A stretch of DNA of 63,588 bases, the filler included, from Platydemus manokwari (taxonomy: Eukaryota), in the NCBI GenBank assembly GCA_037951405.1. It is 5 parts of 5 records of this genome, joined end to end, with 100 filler letters (N's around TTAATTAATTAA, not from the genome) between each part and the next. Parts side by side here need not be neighbours in the genome. Positions count along the whole stretch, not along the records: positions 1 to 15,748 come from JBBMOY011245874.1; 4 more parts are not named here. One strand, 5' to 3'. Below are positions 1 to 15,748 of the stretch, one piece after another. Position 1 is the stretch's first letter; every line of letters begins with the position of its first letter. The notes below the pieces were generated by a model. That model worked only from the letters and a program-made list of their open reading frames with translations, did no database searches and was not told where the DNA came from. The position numbers and the translations under genes were made by a program.

Positions 1-561
1 GTTGCCAACAATGGTCTATTAAAAGCGAAAATCAAATCAGTCAGCTTTATAATCAATTGTCAAAAAAATCAAATCAGTTTTATAATCAATTGTTAATTTT
101 TTGGAGAATAAATTGTTAATTTTTGGGGAATTGGCTTGCAGCAGATTAATCGAATGAATTGTTTATTTTGGAGAATTGGCTTGCAGCAGATTAGTACATA
201 CTTGAGAACATCTTAAGGCGCATATTTAATAGTTTACAGGGAAATGATTTATTTGGGGTTTTCATGTATCAACAGTCTAATTCTAAATGGGGTTTCGGGG
301 ATTTTTTATATGGTGGTAAATCTAAATAAGGTTTAGGGAATTTTATATGATTTGTTTTTATGTGTGCATTTAGGGAGTTTTATATGGTTTGTTTTTATGA
401 GATTAATGTGTGGTGCCATCCCAACAAACTACAACCAACTATGAAAAACAAGCAGCTCATAAAACTCCTCAAGTGTTACTAGCTAGTGATCAATGAAATG
501 ATATTAAAGTAGTGACAAACTGACTTCTACGATTATTTATGAGAAATGACTATTAGAAATT

Positions 562-1101
562 TGTTTGGTGTATAATGAAAACAAGTAAAACATCCACGGA
601 AACCATGGAAATAATTCTCAAAGGGTCGATACACAGAGATTAGACAAGCTCATCTACCTAGAGCCAATCAGATGTTTCCTATTTATCAATTGTTTACAGA
701 ACACGACAAGCAATTGACGCATGCCAACAACAAGTAACAAACAATGACATAAAAGATAAAAGAAAATGTTCTAATAAATTTTCTAAAAGCAAAGTCCTGA
801 AACATCAAGTGGACACACATTATAAGCATATAAAAGGAGTTAGATCTCACTCTACCAGTCTTTCTAGGTCGGGAACTGTCATCTGTGTGACATCTTTGTG
901 ATTTTCTGACAACTAATCCTTATGGTTGGTATCTTTGTCGATGTTTAACTTTCGAGCGTTGATTCTGTTTGAGTTGATTATTGATTTGACTAGCGAGGGT
1001 TTTGATTCCGGACCGTGATTGTTTGACAAATTAATTTTCAGTAAAATATTGTAATCGTTAATTATAATATTAGCATTTAGCGTTAGTAAATATTCTTAAC
1101 A
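562..1101 (+). mobile_element. Diverged solo LTR of the window's TGTT...AACA LTR family
   Basis: Starts TGTTTGG and ends TTAACA. Shares blocks (ccaatcagat; acatcaa..gacacac; tataaaag) with the copies at 10445-10961, 10962-11383 and 50184-50821. Its 3' part matches the reverse complement of ~14640-14730. No TSD seen; boundaries approximate. Confidence 0.5.
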
Positions 1102-1775
1102 GTATAAATTAAAAAGACGACTTCATAATAGAGAAAGCCTAAAGCGCAAAAAATGCAAATACGAGTATGCGTTTTATCCCCAATTTCATTCATTTTTACA
1201 CACACAAGGCATTTGTCGAAGTACTTAAAATATTTAAAACACTGAGTTTTCTGCGCATATCAACCAATATATTTTGAATAAAAATCGAAAATTGATTCTC
1301 AATTATGTAATAAAATACGAACTCTGTTTGCTATAGATGAATCTGGATCATTATTTGATAGCTGACAATAAATGATAGAATTCTACATCAATTTAATTGT
1401 AATAAATAAATTATTCTTAACACTGAAATTTATCAATGAAATTGTTTGGTACTGATATGATGTCAGTGAAAAGATTCAAACTTAAGACTGAGAATGAAAC
1501 CGTATGAGAAAAATTATGAGAACCAATTCAATATATTCAACAAGACCGGTTAATAAAGCTGAGGATACAGATAAAGTTTGGATTAAATGAAGGAAATACT
1601 ATATTTGAGCTTAAATATTCAAACATATCTGGAACTGAATTGCTGGAAAAAATCCCTAAAAATTGAAAAATTTTAAACTTGTCTGAATTTCCTAATAGGA
1701 TCAAACGTTATGACGAATAATAATCATAATATTCTCACGGATATCAATATTCAATCAATAACAGAAATTAAATTG

Positions 1776-1789
1776 TCTGTCATAGCAAC
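1776..1789 (+). promoter_or_regulatory. RFX X-box-like element upstream of the putative tubulin start codon
   Basis: TCTGTCATAGCAAC matches GTTGCCATAGCAAC at 11/14 positions with a perfect right half-site, 29 bp upstream of the ATG at 1818. Confidence 0.35.
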
Positions 1790-1817
1790 AAACTATTATT
1801 AGGATAACAGCAGTGCT

Positions 1818-4309
1818 ATGGTTAGATTTATTTTATAAATTACTTCATTATATTGTTAATTAACCTAAATAATATTTTCTATTAATAATTGATGAAGTAT
1901 TCTATGAATATAATTATTTTTCTAATAACTGGACTAGTTAAATATTAATAGTTTGATTCATTATTATTTGTTAAATTTGCTAGACTCAATTACAACAGAT
2001 GCTCATCGTTAATGCCACTTTGAAATTAAATTCAGTGGGTTACAAACGAAGGTGCATTTATTAAACATGATTTAGAGTTCACGTCGAATAATAAATTTAG
2101 TCAAACAGAAAAGATTTAACTTTAATTATTTTATTTTTATAGCTCGTATTAACTCTGTTGTTAATAGTTTTAATGATGATTTTTATTTATAATAATTAAC
2201 CAAAGATAAGCCAATTTATATAACGTTCTCCAGAGGATTTGATTCGTGTTTGATATTCAAGTTTTATCCAATAAAGTCGCTACTACAAACCCAACCTAAA
2301 GCGTACTATGACTTAAATTCTATGAACCCATCAATAAACAAAGTTGTTGATAAGGTTTTATATAAAAACTTCCTAAAATACTTGAATCTCTTAAATCACT
2401 TTATAACTGCTACCTACCATATAATTTAATTAAAGGTATTTCTAATAATTTAAAAATAATTTACAAAAATTTAAAAATAAATAATTCTTCCCAAATTATC
2501 TTCCCATAAAATGTAATCATTTTACTCAAGTAAAACACTTGTTTAATATTTCTTTAATATTTCTAAATAAATTCCAATATTAGAGAATTACCTGGTTAAT
2601 AAAAGACAATATTCTACAATATATCGGAATATTTTGAAATATTATAATATTAATTATAATAATTTTACTCAAAGAAGATATTTTCTTGTATATTGATAAC
2701 AATAGATGCAAAATAAGCATTATTATTAAAATATTTTTAGAGAGAAGTCATTTGTCTTAACATTGGGCAAGCTGGGGTTCAATTATCAAATGCCGCATGG
2801 GAATTATTTTGCATCGAACATAGCATTGAAGCTAATGGATTGTTAAAAGAGAATTTGTTAGATGAGGAAAACGAATCCTTTAGAACATTTTTCCAAGAAG
2901 TTCCAACTGGACAATTCGTACCTCGAGCAGTGAGTATAGATTTAGAACCCACCGTTATTGGTATGCTGATAATAATTTTATAAAGACTTATTAATTCTTT
3001 AGATGAAATAAGATCTGGACCATATCGAAATCTTTTTCATCCAGATCAATTGATATCGTCTATGGAAGATGGAGCTAGTAATTTTGCACGTGGTTTCTTC
3101 ACAATAGGAAAACGTCAAATAGATTTTCTGACAAATACTATTCGGAAACTTGTTGATGCATGCGAAATGTTGCAAGGATTTTTTGTTGTTCATAGTGTCT
3201 CTGGTGGAACAGGATCTGGATTTTCAACTCTAGCTCTCGACACTCTCACTCTAGAATATACTAAGAGAAACAAATTTCAAATGAGTATCTTTCCTAGCCC
3301 AATGTTATCAACTGCTGTTGTTGAACCTTATAATACAGTGCTTAGCTCAATACGAGCCTTGGAAAATTGTGAGCTGACTAATGTAATGGACAATGAAGCA
3401 ATTTACGGCATTTGCAATACATCTCTTAACATCATAAGACCGACGTATAGTAATATAAACAGAGTTGTATCACAAGTATTCAGTGACATAACGGCCTCAC
3501 TAAGATTTCAAGGTTCATTAAATTCAGACTTAGATCAGTTGTGTACAAATCTTATTCCATATCCTCGAATTCATTTTCCAATTGCTTGTCACACTCCTTT
3601 GACATCAGCAAGTAAAGCTGAGCATGAGCCAATGAATACATTACAGCTAACAAAAAATCTGTTCGATAAAACCAACCAAATGGTAAGTTGTTCTTTGGAT
3701 GAAGGAAAATATATGTGTTGTGTGATCCAATACCGAGGTCGGATTACTCCAAAAGAAGTTAATCAATCAATTTTTGAAATTAAACGAAAAAGTGAAATAA
3801 AATTTGTTGAATGGTGCCCAACTGGGTTCAAATTGGGTGTCAATGGTCAACCACCAATTCGTGTTCCTGGTTCCGACATTGCACAATCAGATCGCAGTGT
3901 CACTATGCTAGCAAATAGTACAAGTATCAAAGAAATATGGGAAAAAATCATTCAAAAATTCGATATTTTATTTTCTAAGAGATCGTTTGTTCATTGGTAT
4001 GTTGGTGAAGGAATGGAGGAAGGAGAATTTAATGAAGCTAGGGATGAAATTGGTGGAATCCACATGGATTATGTTGAGTTGGAAAATTCGGAAGAAGAAG
4101 CACAGGGAGATGAAGCTGGTCCTGTCGAAGAAAAAGAGAAAGCGGCAGTACCGGCTGGAGTTGATCGAGCTGCTACAGAAGAAGAAGTTAAAGCAGAACC
4201 TGAAGCGGAAGAAGAAGAAGAAAAGGTTGAAAAAGAAGAATCGCATGGTAAAGAAGATGAGGATGAAGATGAGGACGAAGACGATGATGAATCGGAAACT
4301 GATAATTAA
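1818..4309 (+). CDS. Divergent alpha-tubulin, ~509 aa; exons 1818-1820 (ATG only, inferred), 2741-2960, 3003-4309
   Basis: Exon 2 reads REVICLNIGQAGVQ...VPRAVSIDLEPTVI. A 42-bp GT-AG intron (2961-3002) leads to exon 3 with SGGTGSG, VVEPYN, PYPRIHF, WCPTGFK and FVHWYVGEGMEEGEF. An ATG-only first exon is typical of animal alpha-tubulins; the nearest upstream ATG|GT I found is 1818-1822, so exon 1 is less certain. Confidence 0.93.
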
Positions 4310-5581
4310 TAATACGCAATTTTGTATAGTTATTAGACACGCTTTTATTGTCATGTAAAAATATTTTTTTAACTTTTAATCCAACCCACAACCTAATTTA
4401 ACCATTTATGTTATATTCATTATTTGGATATAAATATTCAATAAATTTATATTTATTTTTGCTAGTTTTCACTAATATTATAACTAATTATGATATTCAC
4501 TAATTATAATATTATTTCACCCAAGTAATGAGTTAAATTATTTCGAGAAATCTCAAAATCTCAAAATAAAAATGAAATAAAATGCCCGTTTATAAACTAA
4601 ACCAAACTGAAAATATTACTATGGTGTTTTATTGGAAAATTAAATTATAACTTTACAAAATGATAAATTAAACAACATTCAATGCAATAACATAATCTCA
4701 AAGTGCATGATGCTAGGATTTAAGCAATATTCAACGAGTGATTTGAAAATAAATAAAAACAAATGGATTTAAATGTGTATTAAATTATAAGTATGTTTGC
4801 TAATAAGTGAAAGTCGGAATAAAATTCGTATCATAAAATAAAATCATGACAAGTTTATACTTTTTAATAATTTTATGAACATCTCAAAGTTTGATGTTTT
4901 GAAAGTATTCACCAATTGTGTTGATAAAGGGAGTAAAAGTTTTATTTTATATTTTAAAATATTTGTATTCTTATTTAACCAAGTCAGGAAAAGCACTGAT
5001 TTTTAAAAGCATTTATCAAAATCTATGACAGCTAAATAACTTTTCTAGTTCATTGGAGTATACAATAATTTTCAATTCAACTTTATATTAAAATTTGGAC
5101 AAATATTTTTTTAATCCCAGTGGGATCTGAAATCGAAAATTTTACTATATTGGACCACACGTTACATTACCCCTAATTAATTATTGATTAAATTTGTAAA
5201 ATACATATTTCAAAGTTAGACAAAAAGTTTTGTAAATTATAGCTTTATTTAAAAAATATTGCAACTTTATTTTAATTTATTAAATAATTCATTTATTTTG
5301 ACCATTTATTTATCTAATTTTCTTTTTGATTTTCATTTACTAAATCGAGAAAACTTAAATTGATTTTAAATGTATTTGTAATTATTTTATAAAGTTTTTC
5401 TTAAAAGTAAAAAAATAATTTAACAACTACACTGAAAAAAATCATGCATCATCATTTTCCTAAATTTAATATTAATACTATGAAAAAAATTACTTATAAA
5501 AAATTAGTTGTTATAAAATAATTACCTTTTCTTATATTTACACGGTTGTTTTAATTTGCATTATTTTTCACAATTTTAATT

Positions 5582-6763
<1,182 letters not shown>

Positions 6764-7481
6764 TCATATTGATGGAATCTATCTATCTAACCATTCAGTT
6801 TTGACTGTTGATCAATGATAGAATAAATTTTGGCACCGACTAAAATAATAATTTGATTAGTTAAATATTTGGAAAAATGTCATTTTTTGATAATTTTCTG
6901 TTGATTTTGTCGACATTTTTTCATAGTAGTGTTCTCGATATCTTGTCTCAGGTTCTGTGTACAGTTATCGACGATGATGATTTGATGTTCAGGATGATGG
7001 TGAGCATGGTGATGATGACAAAATAGTGGCTTTGTGAACGTTTTTATTGTGCAGCTGGCTGTATGTTCTCTTGTCTTGAAGAAAAAATGGTTCAATTGCG
7101 GATTTATTATGATTTGCCGCCAATTCAAATTTATAAAAAATGCTAAAAATAATGTTAGACAACTTTTGTATTAGAAATGTGGATAATAATCTATTAGTTG
7201 ATGTCATGTTTCCAATTTTTCTAGTTTTGTATAAATGTGGTACATGGTCAAGCCTTAAACGAAAAAGAAATATTGTTGGTTGATTTTTAACAATGGTTAT
7301 CAAATTTGATCCAGTAAACAACTAATTATAGTAGTTATTTCAGAGAAAATATTTTTAAAATTAACTATTTAATTCTAACCACCGATTTTGTCTTAAAATA
7401 TTCAAATTGATTCTCTCAGTTAAAATTATTTTTAATTATAATTTTAAATTAAAGTGACAATTTAACACTTGGAAATTGTTA

Positions 7482-7700
7482 TTATTTGTCACAACAAGGA
7501 GGTATACAAACACAGCAGTCACAATTCCAAGGATTTTTCCCTTTCATTCCAATATTTGTTGGTAAAATATCATGCCGGTATAAAGATCCTTGTTTGAATC
7601 TATGCATTGAATTACATTCTTGAGCTCTGGCATGAGAAGGTAGATATTGTGGTCTTGCCATATTGAAGTGATATCCTGGAGGATGGAAACATGGTAGCAT
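7482..7700 (-). CDS. 72-aa Cys/Pro-rich microprotein, paralog A of an unannotated family
   Basis: ATG in A-rich context (caaaATG); GC above flanks. Strong peptide similarity to 13645-13872 (H-x3-QEC-x5-F-x-QG-x-LYRHDI-x-P-x2-IGM-x-G-x2-PW) despite diverged DNA. Confidence 0.75.
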   Translation of the reverse strand: MLPCFHPPGYHFNMARPQYLPSHARAQECNSMHRFKQGSLYRHDILPTNIGMKGKNPWNCDCCVCIPPCCDK

Positions 7701-9903
7701 TTTGATGAATTGTTTAAATGGTTACTAATAGCTTGTAATAAATTTGATTTTAAATTCTCAATATATTAATATTGAAATTAACGATTGTTATTTTGAATGA
7801 AAGATAATTTATAAGAAAACTATTTTCCAAATTAGCTACATTTTGAAAATGTTTAGATTAAAAATTCATCATTATTACATTGTTTAAATACTAAAATTTG
7901 TTGCTAACTAACAATTAACTTGTTAACGCCTACAATTATCTGTTAACCTGTGTGTAGCACATTTCATTTTTAATAAAATCAAAATTTAACTAATATTCTT
8001 ACTCATGATATTTATACTCATTCCAAATGTGAAATTTCATCTATGCAAATAGCAATAGTTTATTTTAAAGTTAAGTAGTTAAAATTCAAATAAAGTTAAT
8101 CAAGAAAATATAACTTGAAAAATAAAGTTCATTTTATTCTGATACAGTTTTGACATTTCTAATTCATCTCTAATGATTTCTATTATGACGTCACGACGGT
8201 CATTATAATTGTGACCATCAAGTTTCAGAAATTTAATGTAAATATTTACTGAAATAAAAACACACAATTAAACATCTGTAATTTAACAAAATTATTACAA
8301 TTGCTAATAATGGTAGAATGGTATGAACTACAATAGATGATAAATTGTAATCAATTAGGAACTTTCGAGAAGATAAATTATTTCAAAAATAAAGAGCAAT
8401 TTTCAAAATGAACAAAAAGAACAATTTTTAACAATCTCCTAATCCTAAATGTGTTTCATGATTCAAAAATTTTAATCTCAAGCACTGTAAATGGTTAATC
8501 AATTCGATATGTAAGAACCCAATAATAATGATAAATTGTACTTATAATTTTAAAATATTAATTAATAAATTCATTTAAAAGTAAGAAAAATAAATAAAAC
8601 TCTGAAATTTAAAGGTTACTATTATACGTTTGGCACACTATGACCAATACTATAAATGCTATAAATACCTCGCAACCGGAAAATCTAATTAATCATCTCT
8701 AGATGGATATTCAAGTGAGAATTTTAATTTGTAATTAAAATCAAAATATGTCTAGAATTATAAAAATCTGCAGAAAAATCATTGTCGTCAGAGGAATTGA
8801 TTAGTAGTTACTCCAGGCTATAGATGGAAATTTGGGCAAACAGACATCATTTGAGTAGTAACTTCACCAATTGCATTTTTTGTTTGGAATAGTGTCGGTA
8901 CTGTTGGGTAATAACTAACAATAAAACCTGAAAATTATAGTTTAAACTACAATATCGCAGCTCGATTTATGAATAGATACAGTTAAAATTTTATTACAAA
9001 TCAGTAACAAATTATCATACAAGACGAGATTAGTACCCGAAAGTCAAACAAATGTTGTGTAAATCACAAATCAATCTGTTGGGTTGTGATGGTGGTTAAC
9101 AGTTGTTGGGTCAACTCAACAGCGTGAGTTCACTTGCTTTATATTCAAATGTTTATAAAAAGGAATAACAAACAAACTTGTTAAAAAACTTTTATTAAGC
9201 AAATTATATATTACACAAAAAAAATCGATACAAACGCTTAACTCACACTAATTTTAAAACAACAAGTAGGTGAGGTTATCTCACAGAGACCGTGAGAACC
9301 CAAAAAATTGTCTTAAAAGTTTGTTATAGATTTTATTATTGATATCTCCAAAGGAGATCCTTTAGAGTGCGGTTATATTCACTTTTAGGTTTTAATAAAA
9401 ATGTATTTAGTTATTTACTTTCCAATTCTTTGTTAACTCTATCATACTCTAAATTTCAATTTCTTTCTAAGCTTTCACTTTATCGGCAATTTAATCTTAT
9501 CTACGAGTCCGCTTTATTGGTAATTTGATTAATCTCTAAGCGTTCACTTTACCGATATTTTTAAGAGTGAATTGTGATGGAAATCCATCAGCTTATATAG
9601 ATGCTGAGATTCGGTACTTTGTACCTAGCAATTTTCATCACTCTTGTAAATTTTAAGTCATATTTTTACCTTGGACCTTAATGTTTATAATTCTAAAAGT
9701 CCTAAACCTTAAAAATTCTTAATAATTTATCTAACCTTAGAAATTTTATTATTAAATTATTGACATTACCAATTAAATATTATTAAATCATTGACATTAA
9801 AAATTAAATATTCTATTCCTTTTTTCAGTCTCTGATTTATGAATAATAGTATATACGAAATTATATTTTCCATATTTTTAAAATTCTTTATTCTTTACAT
9901 TTC

Positions 9904-9972
9904 ATCCAAATTGAAAATAATTACAAGCTAAAAATGATCCAAATTGAAAATAATTACATGGTAAAAATGATC
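9904..9972. repeat. Two-copy 33-bp tandem repeat
   Basis: atccaaattgaaaataattacaagctaaaaatg followed by atccaaattgaaaataattacatggtaaaaatg. Confidence 0.8.
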
Positions 9973-10444
9973 ACAAAATATAATCAGATGTTATGAATAT
10001 AATGACAAGGATTTACAATCAATATTTCAAGTTTAAAAGTCAGAAATGATCAGAATATCATAAAAAATCAAATCATTAAAATATCATAAGAATCAAGTCA
10101 TTATTGGGAACTGGATTGTCTGGATCCTTCGAATTTGCAGTTCGCAGATTAATCCTTGTTGACATCAAGCGTCTAATTCCAGCTTTGGGTGGCCAACGTT
10201 TCCCATTTTGGGTTTGGTATTAAGGACTTAATAACTATTGTCGTACCGGGTCTTTCAGGTTTTTGTCTGTGGGTGTTCTTGATTTTTTGAACACAGGGTT
10301 ACATCGTGATGGCTGTGGCAGTTGTCGTTTCTGAGGTGGCTGCTATTGCTGCCTCCATTGTAAGAGTTGATGGTATATGGAATCTTTTCGTCTTCGCTCT
10401 CCTCACTATCTGAGTAGAGCCCTAGACGTTCCATATAGTCTTCC

Positions 10445-10961
10445 CAACAAATCAAAAAGGTCACAAGGACCAAGTAAATAACCCTAAAAAGGTCAATATA
10501 CATGTACCAGATAAAGACATATGTCGTTAACCAATCAGATTCATTCTAATGCTAATCCATATTTAGAATCTAAGAATCGACAGACATATACCTACAAACG
10601 GAAGCTAGCTCAAATATCATCCAATCGCACGAGAAATCTAAGGAAAATCTCACGTGAATGGAAAACGAAGATCCTTGACATCAAACAGACACACCCGATA
10701 GGACTATAAAAGAGGTTGAGTTCTATAGATTCCTACCATTCTTTTTTGGTTAGTAACTTTAATGCTTATCTTATGTGTGATTTTATTAATCAGTCTTTTT
10801 GATTACTTTTCATTCTGTTTTTGACTTTCAGGCACTGATTCCGTCTTGAGGGATTTTCTTTCTGAATGTTGAAAAGATTTGCTGTTGTTATTGAGACTTT
10901 GAGTGTAATATTTTAATTAATACCAATTTTAAGATTTAAATTTTTGATTAATAACCCAACA
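10445..10961 (+). mobile_element. LTR-family copy in plus orientation nested within the 8902-11383 element
   Basis: Reverse-complement homolog of ~11040-11383 and ~50470-50821, with TATA-like ctataaaag near 10704. Ends AACCCAACA; a matching TGTTGGGTT lies at 9077. Confidence 0.7.
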
Positions 10962-13644
10962 TAGAGAAAATAAAACAGCCAAAAGACTGGCAGCTGAAAA
11001 TTAAGTAAAATTCAAGAATATAATACAAATTACCGAGAAAAGAAGTCTGGCAGTTACTCATGGAATTCAACCTCTTTTACATACCTATTAAGTGTGTCTG
11101 CTTGATGTCACGGATATTCGTTTTTCATTTGCTGAATTCGTTCATAAAAAGTTATGTTAGCAATTTCCCTTGCATCTCTTGTACGATTGCTAGTTAACTG
11201 AGATTGCAGCCATTTGTTGGTATACACCAGTTGATTTTTAACTTCTAAATATGGATTAATTTTAGAAAGAATCTGATTGGCTGTTGAGACGTGCATTTGT
11301 CGGATCTGGGTATGTCAATCCTCTTAAGGGTTATTTCCCTGTGTTCTGTAAACATTTAGGCTGAATTTGTGATCTACCCAACAGTACAAATAGCCCTATG
11401 CAAGTATTTTACTACAATTGTTCTTTATGGCGTGATATTTTTACACTTAAATTTAGCAACTCAGCAGTCGGATTCAACTTCTATTATTGTATACTTGATT
11501 TACTATATATAACCATTGTTGAATTGTCAATAATGTTTATTTATCTCATTATTATCGATATAAACACGCAATTTAAAAAAGAATCAGATAAGTGGGGACA
11601 GCACAATAATCTAATTAAATATTGCACTAAATAAAACTTGAGATAAATAACATAAGGAAAACATTATCAGACGTGTGTATAAAGACTTAAATTAAATTGA
11701 CTAAGAAAAAGACCACTTGTTAAGGATTTTTTTAAAATGAATTTTCATGAATTTGTTTTAAGTTATATCTCATAATGGATCATTACCATATTCATGTTTG
11801 GGAAATCGTATCTCATTCTTTAATATTTAAGAGCCTGATTATGAAGAATACATCAACTATGGTCTTGTAGTACTTAATCGACGGTATCAACATATTCATG
11901 AACATGAAATGGCAGCAAATAATAGCTTCTTAATCAATATTGATAAATATTAAAAGGAGACGATTGTTGAGGAGGAAACTCATTTTTCTCTCAATATCAA
12001 TGGTGAATAGTTCTATGAATGATACTTTGGTTAAAAATAACAAATGTGTTTTCTTCTTTCTATTCTCCCTTAAACAATATGAACTCTATAAAAAATTAAA
12101 TTTTATTTTCAATAACTTGATTGGGTTTCTATCTGATTCCAAATGTATAAGTAATTATAGTTTTACGATTGAGAGGAACTGAATTATATTACACAATTAT
12201 CAATCTCAATGAAGTTAGATCCTATAGCTTATTTATGTAATTAAAAAGTCAAAATAAATTCTGATACAACTATATGTTAACGTTCGAATAATTCAAATGG
12301 TATAAATAAGCCATTTTATTTATATATAAAACTTTCATAAACAATACTCAAATTATCATTTATTTATCAAACAAATCAAAATTTATAATTAAAAAACAAA
12401 TGAGTGGATTTACTCGTCGAGAGGACGAGTGCCAAAATTACGCATCAATTTACGGTTACATATATTTTTCTAATATGTTATGCAATAATCTTCAAGATAA
12501 AATCCCTTGAAGAATAAATAAATTATATCATTTACCTATAACTTCAAATCAAATGCCCTCCGTAAATGTACTCTCAAACACAACTTATTTAGTCCAATAA
12601 TTGTTAAGCATAGTTTTATTCCAGTACTATCCAAATTATTATCACTTGAAAATTAGTTATCACCATTTCAGTTCTATCAAATGATATTTAAGTAAATTTT
12701 TGTGTCTTTGTCTCATTACGTGCTTCGTGTATATATTATTTTTGAGGTTAAATGCCGGTTAAATGTCGGTGAACTATTTTATTCACCTAATTTTCTGTAT
12801 ATTCAATACACATTATTAATTTTAATCGTGTGTAATTTTTCATTTTGCTTGTCTTGATTTCTAGATATTAATTTTCAATTTACTTTTCGGAATTTCTAAC
12901 TTGTGTATCAGATTTAATTTATTCAGTTTGTTAATCTGGAATGACTCATTCATGTTGGATGTTTATTTTTAATTCTTAATGTGGCTGATTATTTGTAGTG
13001 CGACTGATTATTTTTAATCGTAGTTGATTAATTATGTCCCGGATTTACTATTCTGCTTTATTCAGATATTTATTTAATATAATTATCTTATTCTCCTTAC
13101 TTTATATAAACTTCAACGTTATTTTTAGATATACTGTTATTACTATTACAAATACATATTTCTAATACAAATTTCTAATATACTAAAATTAATTTATTAT
13201 ATTGAGTAATATAATTATACCATTATATATTATTTGTAGTTCTATTTATGAACAAATTATTTATTATTTTATCCATTTCCTATGTCATAAAACAATACAT
13301 TTAATTACCAAAAATGGTCTTGTTCAATATAGAATAGTAAGGATAATTAAAAAAACGAAATTTTCTATTTTATTAAAACCACCAAAGTCAGTAATCCGAA
13401 ATGGGTACTTTTCCAAAAAAAGATTATCAGTGAGCAACCTGTATAAAATTTATAAAGTTACAACTTGATAAGAAAAGTTTTCCAGTACACTTTGAGACAA
13501 GATCCATATACGATAATATTTATAAAATTACATTCTCATCATTCGATAAAAGCATTTTGAAGATTTCTTTGATCAGATAATATTAGAAAACTCTTAAATA
13601 AACTGGAAGTCATCAATGTAATGATTTTATTTATATAATTTTCT

Positions 13645-13872
13645 CTATTCATAATCACATGGGCATCGAGGCTTTAACTTACTGTAAGGATTGCTATGCC
13701 AAGGTGTTCTACCACACATTCCGATTGGACTCGGACCAATGTCATGACGATATAGAAAGCCTTGAGTAAATGGGTTAATTAAACTACATTCTTGACCTTT
13801 TGTATGAGGTGATTGACCAGGTACTGGCTTAATACAGCCTTCATCATTCATTGGATCACAAAAATTTTGCAT
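13645..13872 (-). CDS. 75-aa Cys/Pro-rich microprotein, paralog B
   Basis: Shares the QEC / QGxLYRHDIxP / IGMxGxxPW motif with 7482-7700. AATAAA lies ~14 nt past the stop, and the shared upstream motif sits at the same distance from the ATG. Confidence 0.75.
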   Translation of the reverse strand: MQNFCDPMNDEGCIKPVPGQSPHTKGQECSLINPFTQGFLYRHDIGPSPIGMCGRTPWHSNPYSKLKPRCPCDYE

Positions 13873-14499
13873 ATCAATTAATTATTTGATTTATTAAATT
13901 GCTAATAGTTACAAATTGATTTTTAATGAAGAATATTATCAAATTAATCAACGGTTATTTTGAATTAGTGATAATACTCACAACAATATATCATTTTCTT
14001 GAACTGTTTGTCTATCGTTTTCGTCCAATTGGTGTACTTTTGGATATGATTAGTATGTAAAAAATAATGTTTTATATAAAGTGAGTTTTGTTTTACTATA
14101 AAATGCTAAGTTTTTGATTCATGATGACTATATTGCTATGCATGTATTGTTAAGCAAAACTGAATTTGACGAATGAAATTTATTTATTTATATTGACTCT
14201 AATCAAACCAAGCCAACCTTATAAGATTTTATGAAAATTCGGAAGATAAAATTATAAGAAAAACGAGTTTCTTCAAATATAATCTTGATTTGAAATATGA
14301 TAGTATCGATTTCTTATGCAGTATCTGGTGACCAAATTTTTCATTTTGAATGTTTAGATGAGATTTCTAAATATCTTTCTGGCTTCTGATAGTCATTCCT
14401 TGAAAGGATGTCTGAAATCAAAATTTAAGTGGGTTTTATCTTTAACCAGTTTTCACTTATTGAAATATAGAAGAATCTCGTAGCAAAGTAACAACTTTG

Positions 14500-14730
14500 T
14501 GTTAGATTAGATACTAACTCTGACTGCAAAAATTATAATTATAAACTAATCAACAGTTCCTATAAATTTAATCAGATCGTCATCGTACAACGTTAAAAAT
14601 CGTAAATCAGAGTTACTCAGAAAAAGAAAAGCTCCAAAAGTCAAATGTCAGATCACAATGGAATCATTACCCGAAACATAAAAACGACAGAAAATACCAA
14701 CCATAAAGACTGGTGGTTGTTATCAGAAAT
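14500..14730 (-). mobile_element. Partial LTR-family fragment
   Basis: The block containing ataccaaccataa is the reverse complement of ~900-960 in the 562-1101 copy. Confidence 0.45.
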
Positions 14731-15748
14731 GGTCTCTTTATAGTGATCCAGTACTAAATTGTTATATATTTTTATTAAAGCAATCTACTAATTATTTTCT
14801 TTTAGAATTTTTCTAATATTAATTTAGAATTTTTTAATTATTACATAAAGTTTTATTTTTTACACACTCAACATTTAGCATCATAGAAATCTTTTTCTCT
14901 CTAATCACATATACATTTCTACAAAACTTTACAATGCTAATCGCGTTAGAATAGGGATTTTATTTTGACAAGAAAATTTAAAATTCCAATAAAAATTTCT
15001 GAAAGCCAAATATCAAGTTGGAATCTGACATGTGTGTCACTCGCAGATCTCTGACAAATGCGGTAACGACCATCATATTTTGACCATCAAAGATTATTTT
15101 GGAAAAATGGAGTATTTTTTCAATGTTACCGTTTTTTCAAGTGGTACACAATGAAAAATTTAAATTTAAAGGACTGAGTCTTGAAAAAATGGAGCGTTTA
15201 TCAATCAATATACTTAAATTGGCTAATTAATCGATTACATATCGACAATTAAACAGGCAATTCGATTCAAAAATCAAGCTTAACTAATTGAACTTAAGTT
15301 TTGATATTGTTTATAAATTATTCTTCGCTATTTCATATTTTGCGTACGGCAGATATTGTTAGATTTATTAAATAAATGAAGGTTGTAGGTTGTGTTTGTA
15401 GCAAAACCTAACACTAAATAACATCTCGTATAAATAAACATAAAAATAAGTGCTTAAAAGGCTAGTTGTCATATCACCATTTAGCTTTGAGTATAAGCAT
15501 TATCAATTTTTTCAAAATTTTTCACATTTTTTATAAATTTTTCTTTTAGTTTATTCTGAATAGCTGCTTTGCGCAGAGATATAATGACAAACCGCTGTCT
15601 ACACAACTCATTAATAAAAAATCAAATTCTTATATATGTTGGGGTTCTGCCCAACTAGTTAATTAAAACAATGAATTTACATTGAAAAATATGTATACAA
15701 TATTTGCACGACAGTACGTATAAAATGTGTAATAATTTTTATTGTATC

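What the first reader, a model, noticed from the sequence alone, without database searches (positions are those of the whole stretch)
7482..13872. Unannotated microprotein family: two ~70-aa paralogs with a QGxLYRHDIxP...IGMxGxxPW core
Seen: SHARAQECNSMHRFKQGSLYRHDILPTNIGMKGKNPW aligns without gaps to PHTKGQECSLINPFTQGFLYRHDIGPSPIGMCGRTPW. The genes are on the same strand ~6 kb apart with Cys/Pro-rich ends. Protein conservation with diverged codons implies purifying selection on ORFs small enough to be missed by annotation, and I recognise no family. Inference: S/F-LYRHD resembles the Mn microtubule-binding motif of MAP6/SAXO proteins, and both genes share a contig with the E254Q tubulin, suggesting a possible specialised microtubule-stabilising module.
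Basis: partly seen in the sequence, partly recalled or inferred. Interest (0 to 1): 0.75.

Follow-up and report, generated by a model that had tools for sequence, protein, structure and literature searches.

The report
Two paralogous orphan microprotein genes
Two small genes 6 kb apart encode related 72- and 75-residue proteins that are kept by selection but match no known family, and their proposed link to microtubule-stabilising MAP6/SAXO proteins stays a weak, unproven resemblance.

Summary
Two intact minus-strand ORFs, 7482-7700 (72 aa) and 13645-13872 (75 aa), share an ungapped 39-residue core at 51% identity (E 3e-14). They are the only two copies in the 911-Mb genome.

One orthologue exists, a 74-aa ORF on a 1.2-kb metagenome contig, 73% identical to the second gene. 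DNA similarity to it stops at the ORF edges. Codon-position identity is 0.77/0.84/0.49 and dN/dS is about 0.06, so this is real coding sequence under purifying selection. The first gene is supported less directly (dN/dS 0.17-0.30 against its paralogue).

Pfam, PDB sequences, the ESM Atlas, viral contigs and an exhaustive profile search of 1.84 billion representatives gave no family. The one extra hit is a tandem-repeat artefact. AlphaFold predicts disorder.

The MAP6/SAXO idea is not established. The core aligns in register with the Mn-like motif (PF-x6-YR-x-D), but five tests give only P of about 0.005-0.2. The genome's own SAXO repeats score 16-44 bits on their PSSM; the microproteins score -5 to 0. 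The other SAXO hallmarks are absent. Nothing tests a functional module with the neighbouring E254Q alpha-tubulin. No RNA evidence could be obtained.

The parts
7482..7700 (-). Paralogue 1 coding sequence, 72 aa plus a TAA TAA stop. The whole CDS lies in one ORF.
   Evidence: ORF list. No stops in this frame, against 1-5 in the other five frames. An in-frame stop lies 7 codons upstream of the ATG. GC is 0.375 against 0.22-0.26 in the flanks. dN/dS against paralogue 2 is 0.30 over the whole protein and 0.17 in the core.
13645..13872 (-). Paralogue 2 coding sequence, 75 aa plus a TAG stop. The whole CDS lies in one ORF.
   Evidence: ORF list. The orthologue P0001 is 73% identical over 97% of its length. 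dN/dS is 0.06, and DNA similarity to the orthologue contig is confined to the ORF. An in-frame stop lies 3 codons upstream of the ATG.
7518..7634 (-). Conserved core of paralogue 1, residues 23-61, from H-A-R-A-Q-E-C through the PW.
   Evidence: BLASTP alignment and the invariant columns of alignment A1.
13690..13806 (-). Conserved core of paralogue 2, residues 23-61.
   Evidence: BLASTP alignment and alignment A1. Core dN/dS against the orthologue is 0.047.
7701..7808 (-). Conserved upstream region of paralogue 1, a candidate 5' UTR or proximal promoter. It contains the exact 12-mer ATTCAAAATAAC at 7787-7798.
   Evidence: Collinear DNA homology between the two loci runs from about -105 to codon 59. 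Repeat family D1. The 12-mer occurs only twice in the window, at matching positions upstream of the two genes. Any function is inferred, not shown.
13873..13975 (-). Conserved upstream region of paralogue 2. It contains the same 12-mer at 13954-13965.
   Evidence: The orthologue keeps only a partial copy (CAATTCAA) at a similar distance upstream.
13626..13631 (-). Candidate AATAAA polyadenylation signal, 14 nt after the stop of paralogue 2.
   Evidence: Sequence and offset list. Such hexamers are common in this AT-rich DNA, so this is weak.

Best explanation
These are two tandemly duplicated genes, each with its whole CDS in one exon, for a lineage-restricted protein of about 8 kDa that is rich in Cys and Pro. 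Shown: both reading frames are intact, there are only two copies in the genome, and a third member exists in another organism. The sequence has evolved as protein. Synonymous sites are saturated, while a core of about 30 residues (QEC...F-x-QG-x-LYRHDI-x-P-x-x-IGM-x-G-x-x-PW) and Cys5, His23, Cys29, His43 and Cys70 are invariant. Inferred: the protein has no signal peptide or hydrophobic segment and is predicted to have no fold of its own. It therefore most likely acts inside the cell as a short, partner-templated ligand. On this reading the invariant core docks as a linear motif on a conserved partner. The variable Cys-bearing ends would add metal binding, disulfide cross-links or lipid modification. 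The partner is unknown; the microtubule lattice is one candidate and is treated as a rival below. The duplicates also keep about 100 nt of upstream sequence, which suggests shared regulation.
For: ORFs and their similarity. Only two copies in 911 Mb, by protein and by profile search. By contrast, the repeat lying between them has at least 2648 first-look candidates. Orthologue P0001, 73% identical, seen on two independent metagenome contigs. Selection: dN/dS 0.06 (paralogue 2 against orthologue) and 0.17-0.30 (between paralogues), codon-position identity 0.77/0.84/0.49, similarity ending at the ORF borders, Fisher P 2e-11 and 9e-4. Exon-like GC, with GC3 of 0.21-0.22, close to the tubulin exon's 0.24. 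In-frame stops just upstream of all three ATGs, and a conserved M-x-(x)-F/P-C start. Disorder: AlphaFold2 mean pLDDT 47 with no secondary structure. GRAVY is -0.6 to -1.0. Upstream homology and the shared 12-mer.
Against: There is no transcript or peptide evidence. Paralogue 1 has no orthologue of its own, so its constraint is inferred only from comparison with paralogue 2 and the orthologue. The disorder prediction rests on a three-sequence alignment and may simply be a failed prediction. The docking-motif mechanism is inference from composition and the conservation pattern; no partner has been identified. The databases searched are dominated by prokaryotes and metagenomes, so the lack of relatives is weak evidence for lineage restriction.
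Confidence: 0.55

Rival explanations
1. A miniature SAXO/MAP6-type microtubule binder. On this reading each protein carries one degenerate Mn-like module (PF-x4-S-x-YR-x-D-hydrophobic-x-P). It binds the microtubule wall or lumen and stabilises it, possibly together with the neighbouring E254Q alpha-tubulin.
For: In most tests the best-scoring window falls in the Mn-like register. Against the published motif 2 regular expression (PMC3280300), the orthologue matches 9 of 23 positions (shuffle P 0.005) and paralogue 2 matches 8 of 23 (P 0.02). That is within the 5-12 range of this genome's own SAXO repeats. hhalign aligns PF...YR.D in register. The genome encodes true SAXO proteins, so the organism has cilia or flagella. 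By eye only: paralogue 2 and the orthologue have KLKP followed by a CP motif. This recalls the K-S-x-K-P inter-repeat and the terminal CP motif of SAXO units. A catalytically altered alpha-tubulin lies 3-9 kb away.
Against: PF05217 gives no match at E up to 10, and its six-frame search of the genome hits other contigs only. A PSSM built from 19 own-genome repeats scores real repeats at 16-44 bits and held-out ones at 5-28 bits. The microproteins score -5 to 0 bits, next to a random window ORF at -3.6. HMMER gives E 0.05-0.09. hhalign gives P 0.064 and probability 0.9%. In the reciprocal test, 15 of 200 shuffled sets do as well. Paralogue 1 matches only 6 of 23 positions (P 0.21), and its best window there is out of register. 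The aromatic F/Y position is Ile in all three proteins. There is one module instead of 6-12, and no N-terminal Cys cluster. pI is 6.0-8.7, against 8.25-9.05 reported for SAXO. The three sequences are homologous, so their P values are not independent. The resemblance was also chosen after the fact.
Confidence: 0.15
2. A small metal-binding or disulfide-cross-linked structural protein. The invariant Cys and His residues (C5, H23, C29, H43, C70), together with the C-terminal CPC or CC clusters, would bind zinc or form cross-links. That would be comparable in kind to small Cys-rich structural proteins of sperm or cuticle.
For: Five invariant Cys/His positions among the 26 invariant columns. There are 5-8 Cys in 72-75 residues, and paralogue 1 has a Cys cluster at its C-terminus. 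A structure that depends on a ligand or cross-links could explain why AlphaFold sees no fold.
Against: No CxxC or HxxxH spacing typical of known zinc-binding modules. No Pfam or PDB match. The most strongly conserved stretch, LYRHDI...IGM.G..PW, is mostly not Cys or His. The Cys in IGMCG is Lys in paralogue 1.
Confidence: 0.15
3. Not independent functional genes. The ORFs could be terminal exons of larger genes, or decaying copies of a once-coding sequence. Paralogue 1 in particular could be an untranscribed duplicate.
For: No expression data could be obtained. Eighteen open frames of at least 78 codons occur in the window, so an open frame alone proves little. Paralogue 1 has a higher dN/dS and a divergent C-terminus.
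Against: All three ORFs start with a conserved Met preceded closely by in-frame stops, and conservation ends at the stop codon. Synonymous sites between the paralogues are saturated, yet both frames remain open, with dN/dS significantly below 1. They are not repeat-derived, since only two copies exist.
Confidence: 0.1

Closest known systems
SAXO / MAP6 family (Pfam PF05217 SAXO1-2; Mn and Mn-like microtubule-binding modules; Dacheux et al. 2012, PMC3280300)
   Same: It has a short Pro-rich motif in the same register: PF, then six residues to a Tyr-Arg, an acidic residue two positions later, then a hydrophobic residue and a Pro. Cys residues sit at the termini, and paralogue 2 and the orthologue have a CP motif near the C-terminus. 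The protein is predicted disordered.
   Different: There is one candidate module instead of 6-12 tandem ones. No match to PF05217. It scores -5 to 0 bits on a PSSM on which this genome's real repeats score 16-44. Ile replaces the conserved F/Y. There is no N-terminal CVC...CTC cluster. Two of the three members are not basic. The proteins are 72-75 aa, whereas true SAXO genes in this genome show single exons of 100-230 codons. Microtubule binding is untested.
Small microtubule inner proteins of cilia and sperm that have solved structures
   Same: Small size, predicted disorder when alone, high Pro and Gly content, and presence in an organism with cilia or flagella.
   Different: No sequence match to any PDB chain, by single sequence or by profile, at E up to 10. 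No localisation data.
Taxon-restricted (orphan) small-ORF proteins
   Same: Under 100 aa, the whole CDS in one exon, no detectable homologue outside one close relative, a duplicated gene pair, and easily missed by annotation.
   Different: Selection is unusually well supported for an orphan gene, with saturated synonymous sites and dN/dS of 0.06. The core of about 30 residues is sharply conserved, which points to a specific binding function rather than a young, drifting ORF.

Membership tests
SAXO/MAP6 (PF05217) | Match to the Pfam SAXO1-2 model at or above its gathering score | tested here: not met
   hmmscan of both proteins found no family at E up to 10. A six-frame PF05217 search of the whole genome found 13 places on other contigs, 12 of them over the cut-off, and none in the window.
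SAXO/MAP6 (PF05217) | Tandem array of Mn-like modules (6 in TbSAXO, 12 in PfSAXO and MmSaxo1), separated by inter-repeats of about 18-20 aa | tested here: not met
   There is only one candidate module per 72-75-aa protein. Own-genome SAXO exons show 3-5 units per exon, with a period of about 33-34 aa.
SAXO/MAP6 (PF05217) | Mn-like motif consensus, with conserved T/S and F/Y six residues apart | tested here: inconclusive
   Matches to the published regular expression: 9, 8 and 6 of 23 positions, with shuffle P 0.005, 0.02 and 0.21. Real units match 5-12 of 23. The own-genome PSSM gives -5 to 0 bits against 16-44 for real units, P 0.02-0.09. HMMER E 0.05-0.09. hhalign P 0.064. Reciprocal test: 15 of 200 shuffled sets do as well. 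The T/S position is Ser in two of three and Phe in one. The F/Y position is Ile in all three.
SAXO/MAP6 (PF05217) | N-terminal cysteine cluster (motif 1) | tested here: not met
   There is a single conserved Cys at position 4-5, plus one more at 13 in paralogue 2. The only Cys cluster is at the C-terminus of paralogue 1. The motif definition comes from PMC3280300.
SAXO/MAP6 (PF05217) | Binds microtubules and stabilises them against cold and nocodazole | not testable with these tools
   This needs co-sedimentation or a cell-based stabilisation assay.
Structurally characterised ciliary and sperm microtubule inner proteins | Sequence similarity to a chain in a solved axoneme or doublet structure | tested here: not met
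   phmmer with both proteins and hmmsearch with the three-sequence profile found no PDB sequence at E up to 10. A fold comparison was not attempted because the model is unusable (pLDDT 47).
Dispersed repeat or transposon-derived ORF | Many copies across the genome, often carrying stops | tested here: not met
   Exactly two copies were found by protein and by profile search. The same tool finds at least 150 scored matches (2648 first-look candidates) for the inverted 62-aa ORF pair lying between the two genes.
Taxon-restricted small-ORF protein | Protein-coding constraint together with no detectable homologue beyond close relatives | tested here: met
   Constraint. Relatives: only P0001 in the word search and in the exhaustive profile search of 1.84 billion representatives. 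The second hit there, P0002, scores 15.6 bits and E 1.3e3 per unit once its 13 identical repeats are reduced to one. Caveat: eukaryote coverage of these libraries is limited.

The most novel reading that the evidence does not exclude
The family is a minimal, single-module descendant or convergent mimic of SAXO/MAP6 proteins. It would have one degenerate Mn-like module between Cys-bearing ends. It would have been duplicated next to an alpha-tubulin whose GTPase-activating Glu254 is replaced by Gln. The small proteins and the tubulin would together build an unusually stable class of microtubules in one cell type, for example sperm or cilia.
Probability: 0.1. Interest if true: 0.7.

Novelty: new member of a known kind. 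Interest (0 to 1): 0.35.

Why it matters
It shows that comparing paralogues can recover real, selected microprotein genes of 72-75 codons, which gene callers tend to skip in an AT-rich, highly fragmented animal genome. It also supplies a sharply defined motif (QG-x-LYRHDI-x-P-x-x-IGM-x-G-x-x-PW) that can be searched for in transcriptomes. If the weak Mn-like resemblance proved real, these would be the smallest SAXO-type microtubule binders known. They would then give a one-module system for studying how that motif reads the tubulin lattice. As the evidence stands, this is an orphan family of unknown function, of moderate interest.

Tried and rejected
1. Pfam scan of both proteins at E up to 10: nothing.

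2. PDB sequence search with each protein and with the profile: nothing.

3. ESM Atlas feature search with both proteins: no usable hit and low recognition scores.

4. Word-index protein search. Paralogue 2 found only P0001. Paralogue 1 found no candidate.

5. Exhaustive profile search. The second hit, P0002, is 13 identical 134-aa units. Its E of 3e-22 is a sum over identical copies; one unit gives E 1.3e3. Its Pfam hits are the same artefact, with no stretch significant on its own. Rejected as a relative.

6. Metagenome and viral contig scans with the profile found only the known orthologue contig and nothing viral.

7. A weak own-genome hit on a 319-bp GC-rich contig (E 1.17, with a stop codon) was translated once. 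It looked unrelated and was dropped without further searching. A second weak hit (E 3.7, with a stop codon) was not pursued.

8. AlphaFold2 gave pLDDT 47, so no fold search was run.

Exact-protein look-ups found no record.

11. A full-text search for three core peptides found no paper.

12. The bacterial promoter and terminator scan is not meaningful for this eukaryotic locus.

13. The presence of SAXO genes shows only that the organism is ciliated or flagellated.

14. The third word-index protein search was left unused. The only remaining use, the neighbouring tubulin, would not change the verdict.


Full report
OBSERVATION

The window piece (1-15748) is AT-rich, with GC of 0.21-0.35. The first is at 7482-7700 (72 aa) and the second at 13645-13872 (75 aa). 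Their ATGs are 6172 nt apart.

BLASTP aligns residues 23-61 of each without gaps: 20/39 identical, 28/39 positive, E 3e-14.

ARE THEY GENES?

Four lines of evidence say yes.

1. Copy number. Protein and profile searches of the whole 911-Mb assembly find only these two places. As an internal control, the same tool finds at least 150 scored matches, out of 2648 first-look candidates, for an inverted pair of 62-aa ORFs lying between the two genes. The microprotein ORFs are therefore not repeat-derived, and the contig belongs to the main genome.

2. An orthologue.
- The word-index search found one protein, P0001 (74 aa), 73% identical to the second gene over 97% of its length. It is encoded on a 1222-bp JGI metagenome contig and on a second, ENA metagenome contig.
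- DNA similarity between that contig and the window is confined to the ORF. The single significant blastn segment covers codons 18-72, and the flanks do not align.
- Identity by codon position is 0.77/0.84/0.49, and pS is 0.745 against pN 0.194. This gives dN/dS of about 0.06, or 0.047 in the core. Synonymous change exceeds non-synonymous change with Fisher P 2e-11.

3. The two paralogues. They are saturated at synonymous sites (pS 0.70) yet keep open frames. dN/dS is 0.30 overall and 0.17 in the core, with P of about 1e-3.

4. Gene-like anatomy.
- ORF GC is 0.375 and 0.391, against 0.22-0.26 in the flanks, with GC3 of 0.21-0.22. The tubulin exon in the same window looks much the same.
- All three ORFs begin with a Met followed by a conserved Cys, and in-frame stops lie 3-11 codons upstream. 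Conservation ends at the stop codon.
- The neighbouring PP2A-type exon ends TPDYFL followed by TAA, so the standard stop codons apply.

The coding sequence of each gene therefore lies in one exon. The evidence is direct for the second gene and indirect for the first, which has no orthologue of its own.

The two loci also retain collinear DNA homology from about 105 nt upstream of the ATG to codon 59. This stretch includes an exact 12-mer, ATTCAAAATAAC. The 12-mer occurs only twice in the window, both times on the minus strand, 82-98 nt upstream of the two ATGs. I read this as a shared 5' UTR or proximal promoter, which is inference.

No transcript evidence could be obtained.

WHAT FAMILY?

None that can be detected.
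- Pfam at E up to 10: no hit.
- PDB sequences, by phmmer and by profile: no hit.
- ESM Atlas: no usable hit.
- Viral contigs: no hit.
- Full-text search for core peptides: no hit.

An exhaustive HMMER search of 1.84 billion representatives with the three-sequence profile returned P0001 and one other protein, P0002. P0002 consists of 13 identical 134-aa units. A single unit scores 15.6 bits, which is E 1.3e3 at library size. Its apparent E of 3e-22, and its odd Pfam hits with no individually significant stretch, are artefacts of summing identical repeats.

The family thus has three known members. These libraries are dominated by prokaryotic and metagenomic sequence, so the lack of animal relatives is only weak evidence of true lineage restriction.

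PROPERTIES

- The proteins are about 8.3 kDa and hydrophilic (GRAVY -0.6 to -1.0). They have 5-8 Cys and 9-11 Pro and no hydrophobic leader. pI is 8.7, 6.8 and 6.0.
- There are 26 invariant columns. They include C5, H23, QEC27-29, F35, QG37-38, LYRHDI40-45, P47, IGM50-52, G54, PW57-58, P68 and C70.
- AlphaFold2 on the three-row alignment gives mean pLDDT 47 and no secondary structure.

This pattern is a sharply conserved linear core inside an otherwise variable chain with no predicted fold. It fits a short protein that becomes ordered on a partner. That is my preferred mechanism, but it is inferred.

THE MAP6/SAXO IDEA

I tested this in five ways.

First, the published definition (PMC3280300) requires:
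- an N-terminal Cys cluster (motif 1);
- 6-12 tandem Mn-like modules, with conserved T/S and F/Y six residues apart;
- a CP motif in the last module;
- a basic pI.

The genome does encode true SAXO proteins. PF05217 finds 13 places on other contigs, 12 of them over the cut-off, and none in the window. Neither microprotein matches PF05217.

From those own-genome exons I extracted Mn-like units and ran these tests:
- HMMER with the repeat model gives E 0.05-0.09 per protein.
- A PSSM from 19 units scores real units at 16-44 bits by leave-one-out, and units outside the seed set at 5-28 bits. The microproteins score -5 to 0 bits (shuffle P 0.02-0.09), beside a random window ORF at -3.6 bits.
- hhalign aligns PF...YR.D in register, but with P 0.064 and probability 0.9%.
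- Against the published regular expression, the orthologue matches 9 of 23 positions (P 0.005). Paralogue 2 matches 8 of 23 (P 0.02), and paralogue 1 matches 6 of 23 (P 0.21). Real units match 5-12 of 23.
- In the reciprocal test, the microprotein profile scores real units slightly above shuffled ones; 15 of 200 shuffled sets do as well.

It is statistically marginal, the three sequences are not independent, and the motif was chosen after the fact. The architectural hallmarks are absent: there is one module rather than an array, no N-terminal Cys cluster, and Ile at the F/Y position.

Membership is not supported. A SAXO-like mode of action is not excluded, and I put it at about 0.1-0.15.

By eye, paralogue 2 and the orthologue also have KLKP followed by CP. 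This recalls the K-S-x-K-P inter-repeat and the terminal CP of SAXO units. The spacing differs, however, and paralogue 1 lacks it. I treat this as a lead only.

THE 'MODULE' WITH THE TUBULIN

The exon at 3050-4309 is clearly alpha-tubulin (E 7.5e-133 to alpha-1B). It reads DLDQLC where alpha-tubulin reads DLTEFQ, so Glu254 is Gln. It ends in a long acidic tail.

The link to the microproteins is proximity only. A PP2A-type exon lies between the tubulin and the first microprotein gene. The shared upstream 12-mer is not found near the tubulin. The orthologue contig is too short to test synteny. The module idea is untested.

VERDICT

The two ORFs are a real, selected, duplicated microprotein gene pair of an undescribed family. 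Their function is unknown.

The best-supported working model is a partner-templated linear-motif protein with Cys-bearing ends. The SAXO-like reading is a low-probability but testable alternative.

Interest is moderate. The result is solid as gene discovery, but it carries no functional evidence.

Noticed in passing
window 10521-10709 (+) and 11108-11296 (-): Two convergent 62-aa ORFs, 43% identical, form the arms of an inverted repeat (I1 arms 10657-10787 and 10999-11129). The ORF has at least 150 scored matches (2648 first-look candidates) across the genome, many carrying stops. This looks like a dispersed foldback or MITE-like repeat inserted between the two microprotein genes.
   Followed up: partly
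window 3050-4309 (+): An alpha-tubulin-like exon covers residues equivalent to about 92-448 of alpha-1B (E 7.5e-133). It reads DLDQLC where alpha-tubulin has DLTEFQ, so the catalytic Glu254 is Gln. It has an acidic tail of about 65 residues that does not end in Tyr.
   Followed up: partly
window 6416-6763 (+): The last exon of a PP2A-type serine/threonine phosphatase catalytic subunit, ending TPDYFL then TAA. It lies between the tubulin and the first microprotein gene and shows that the standard stop codons are in use.
   Followed up: partly
window 7787-7798 and 13954-13965 (-): The exact 12-mer ATTCAAAATAAC occurs only twice in the window, at matching positions 82-98 nt upstream of the two microprotein ATGs. 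It lies inside about 100 nt of retained upstream homology. The orthologue keeps only CAATTCAA at a similar distance.
   Followed up: partly
G000 contigs behind L010-L021: At least ten contigs carry true SAXO (PF05217) exons with 3-5 Mn-like units each, so the organism makes cilia or flagella. These contigs fall into two GC classes, 0.39-0.44 and 0.24-0.33. This may only reflect how much of each short contig is exon.
   Followed up: no
window 10255-10503 (-): An 82-aa ORF with an acidic Ser/Glu stretch lies directly beside the repeat element. It has no Pfam match.
   Followed up: no
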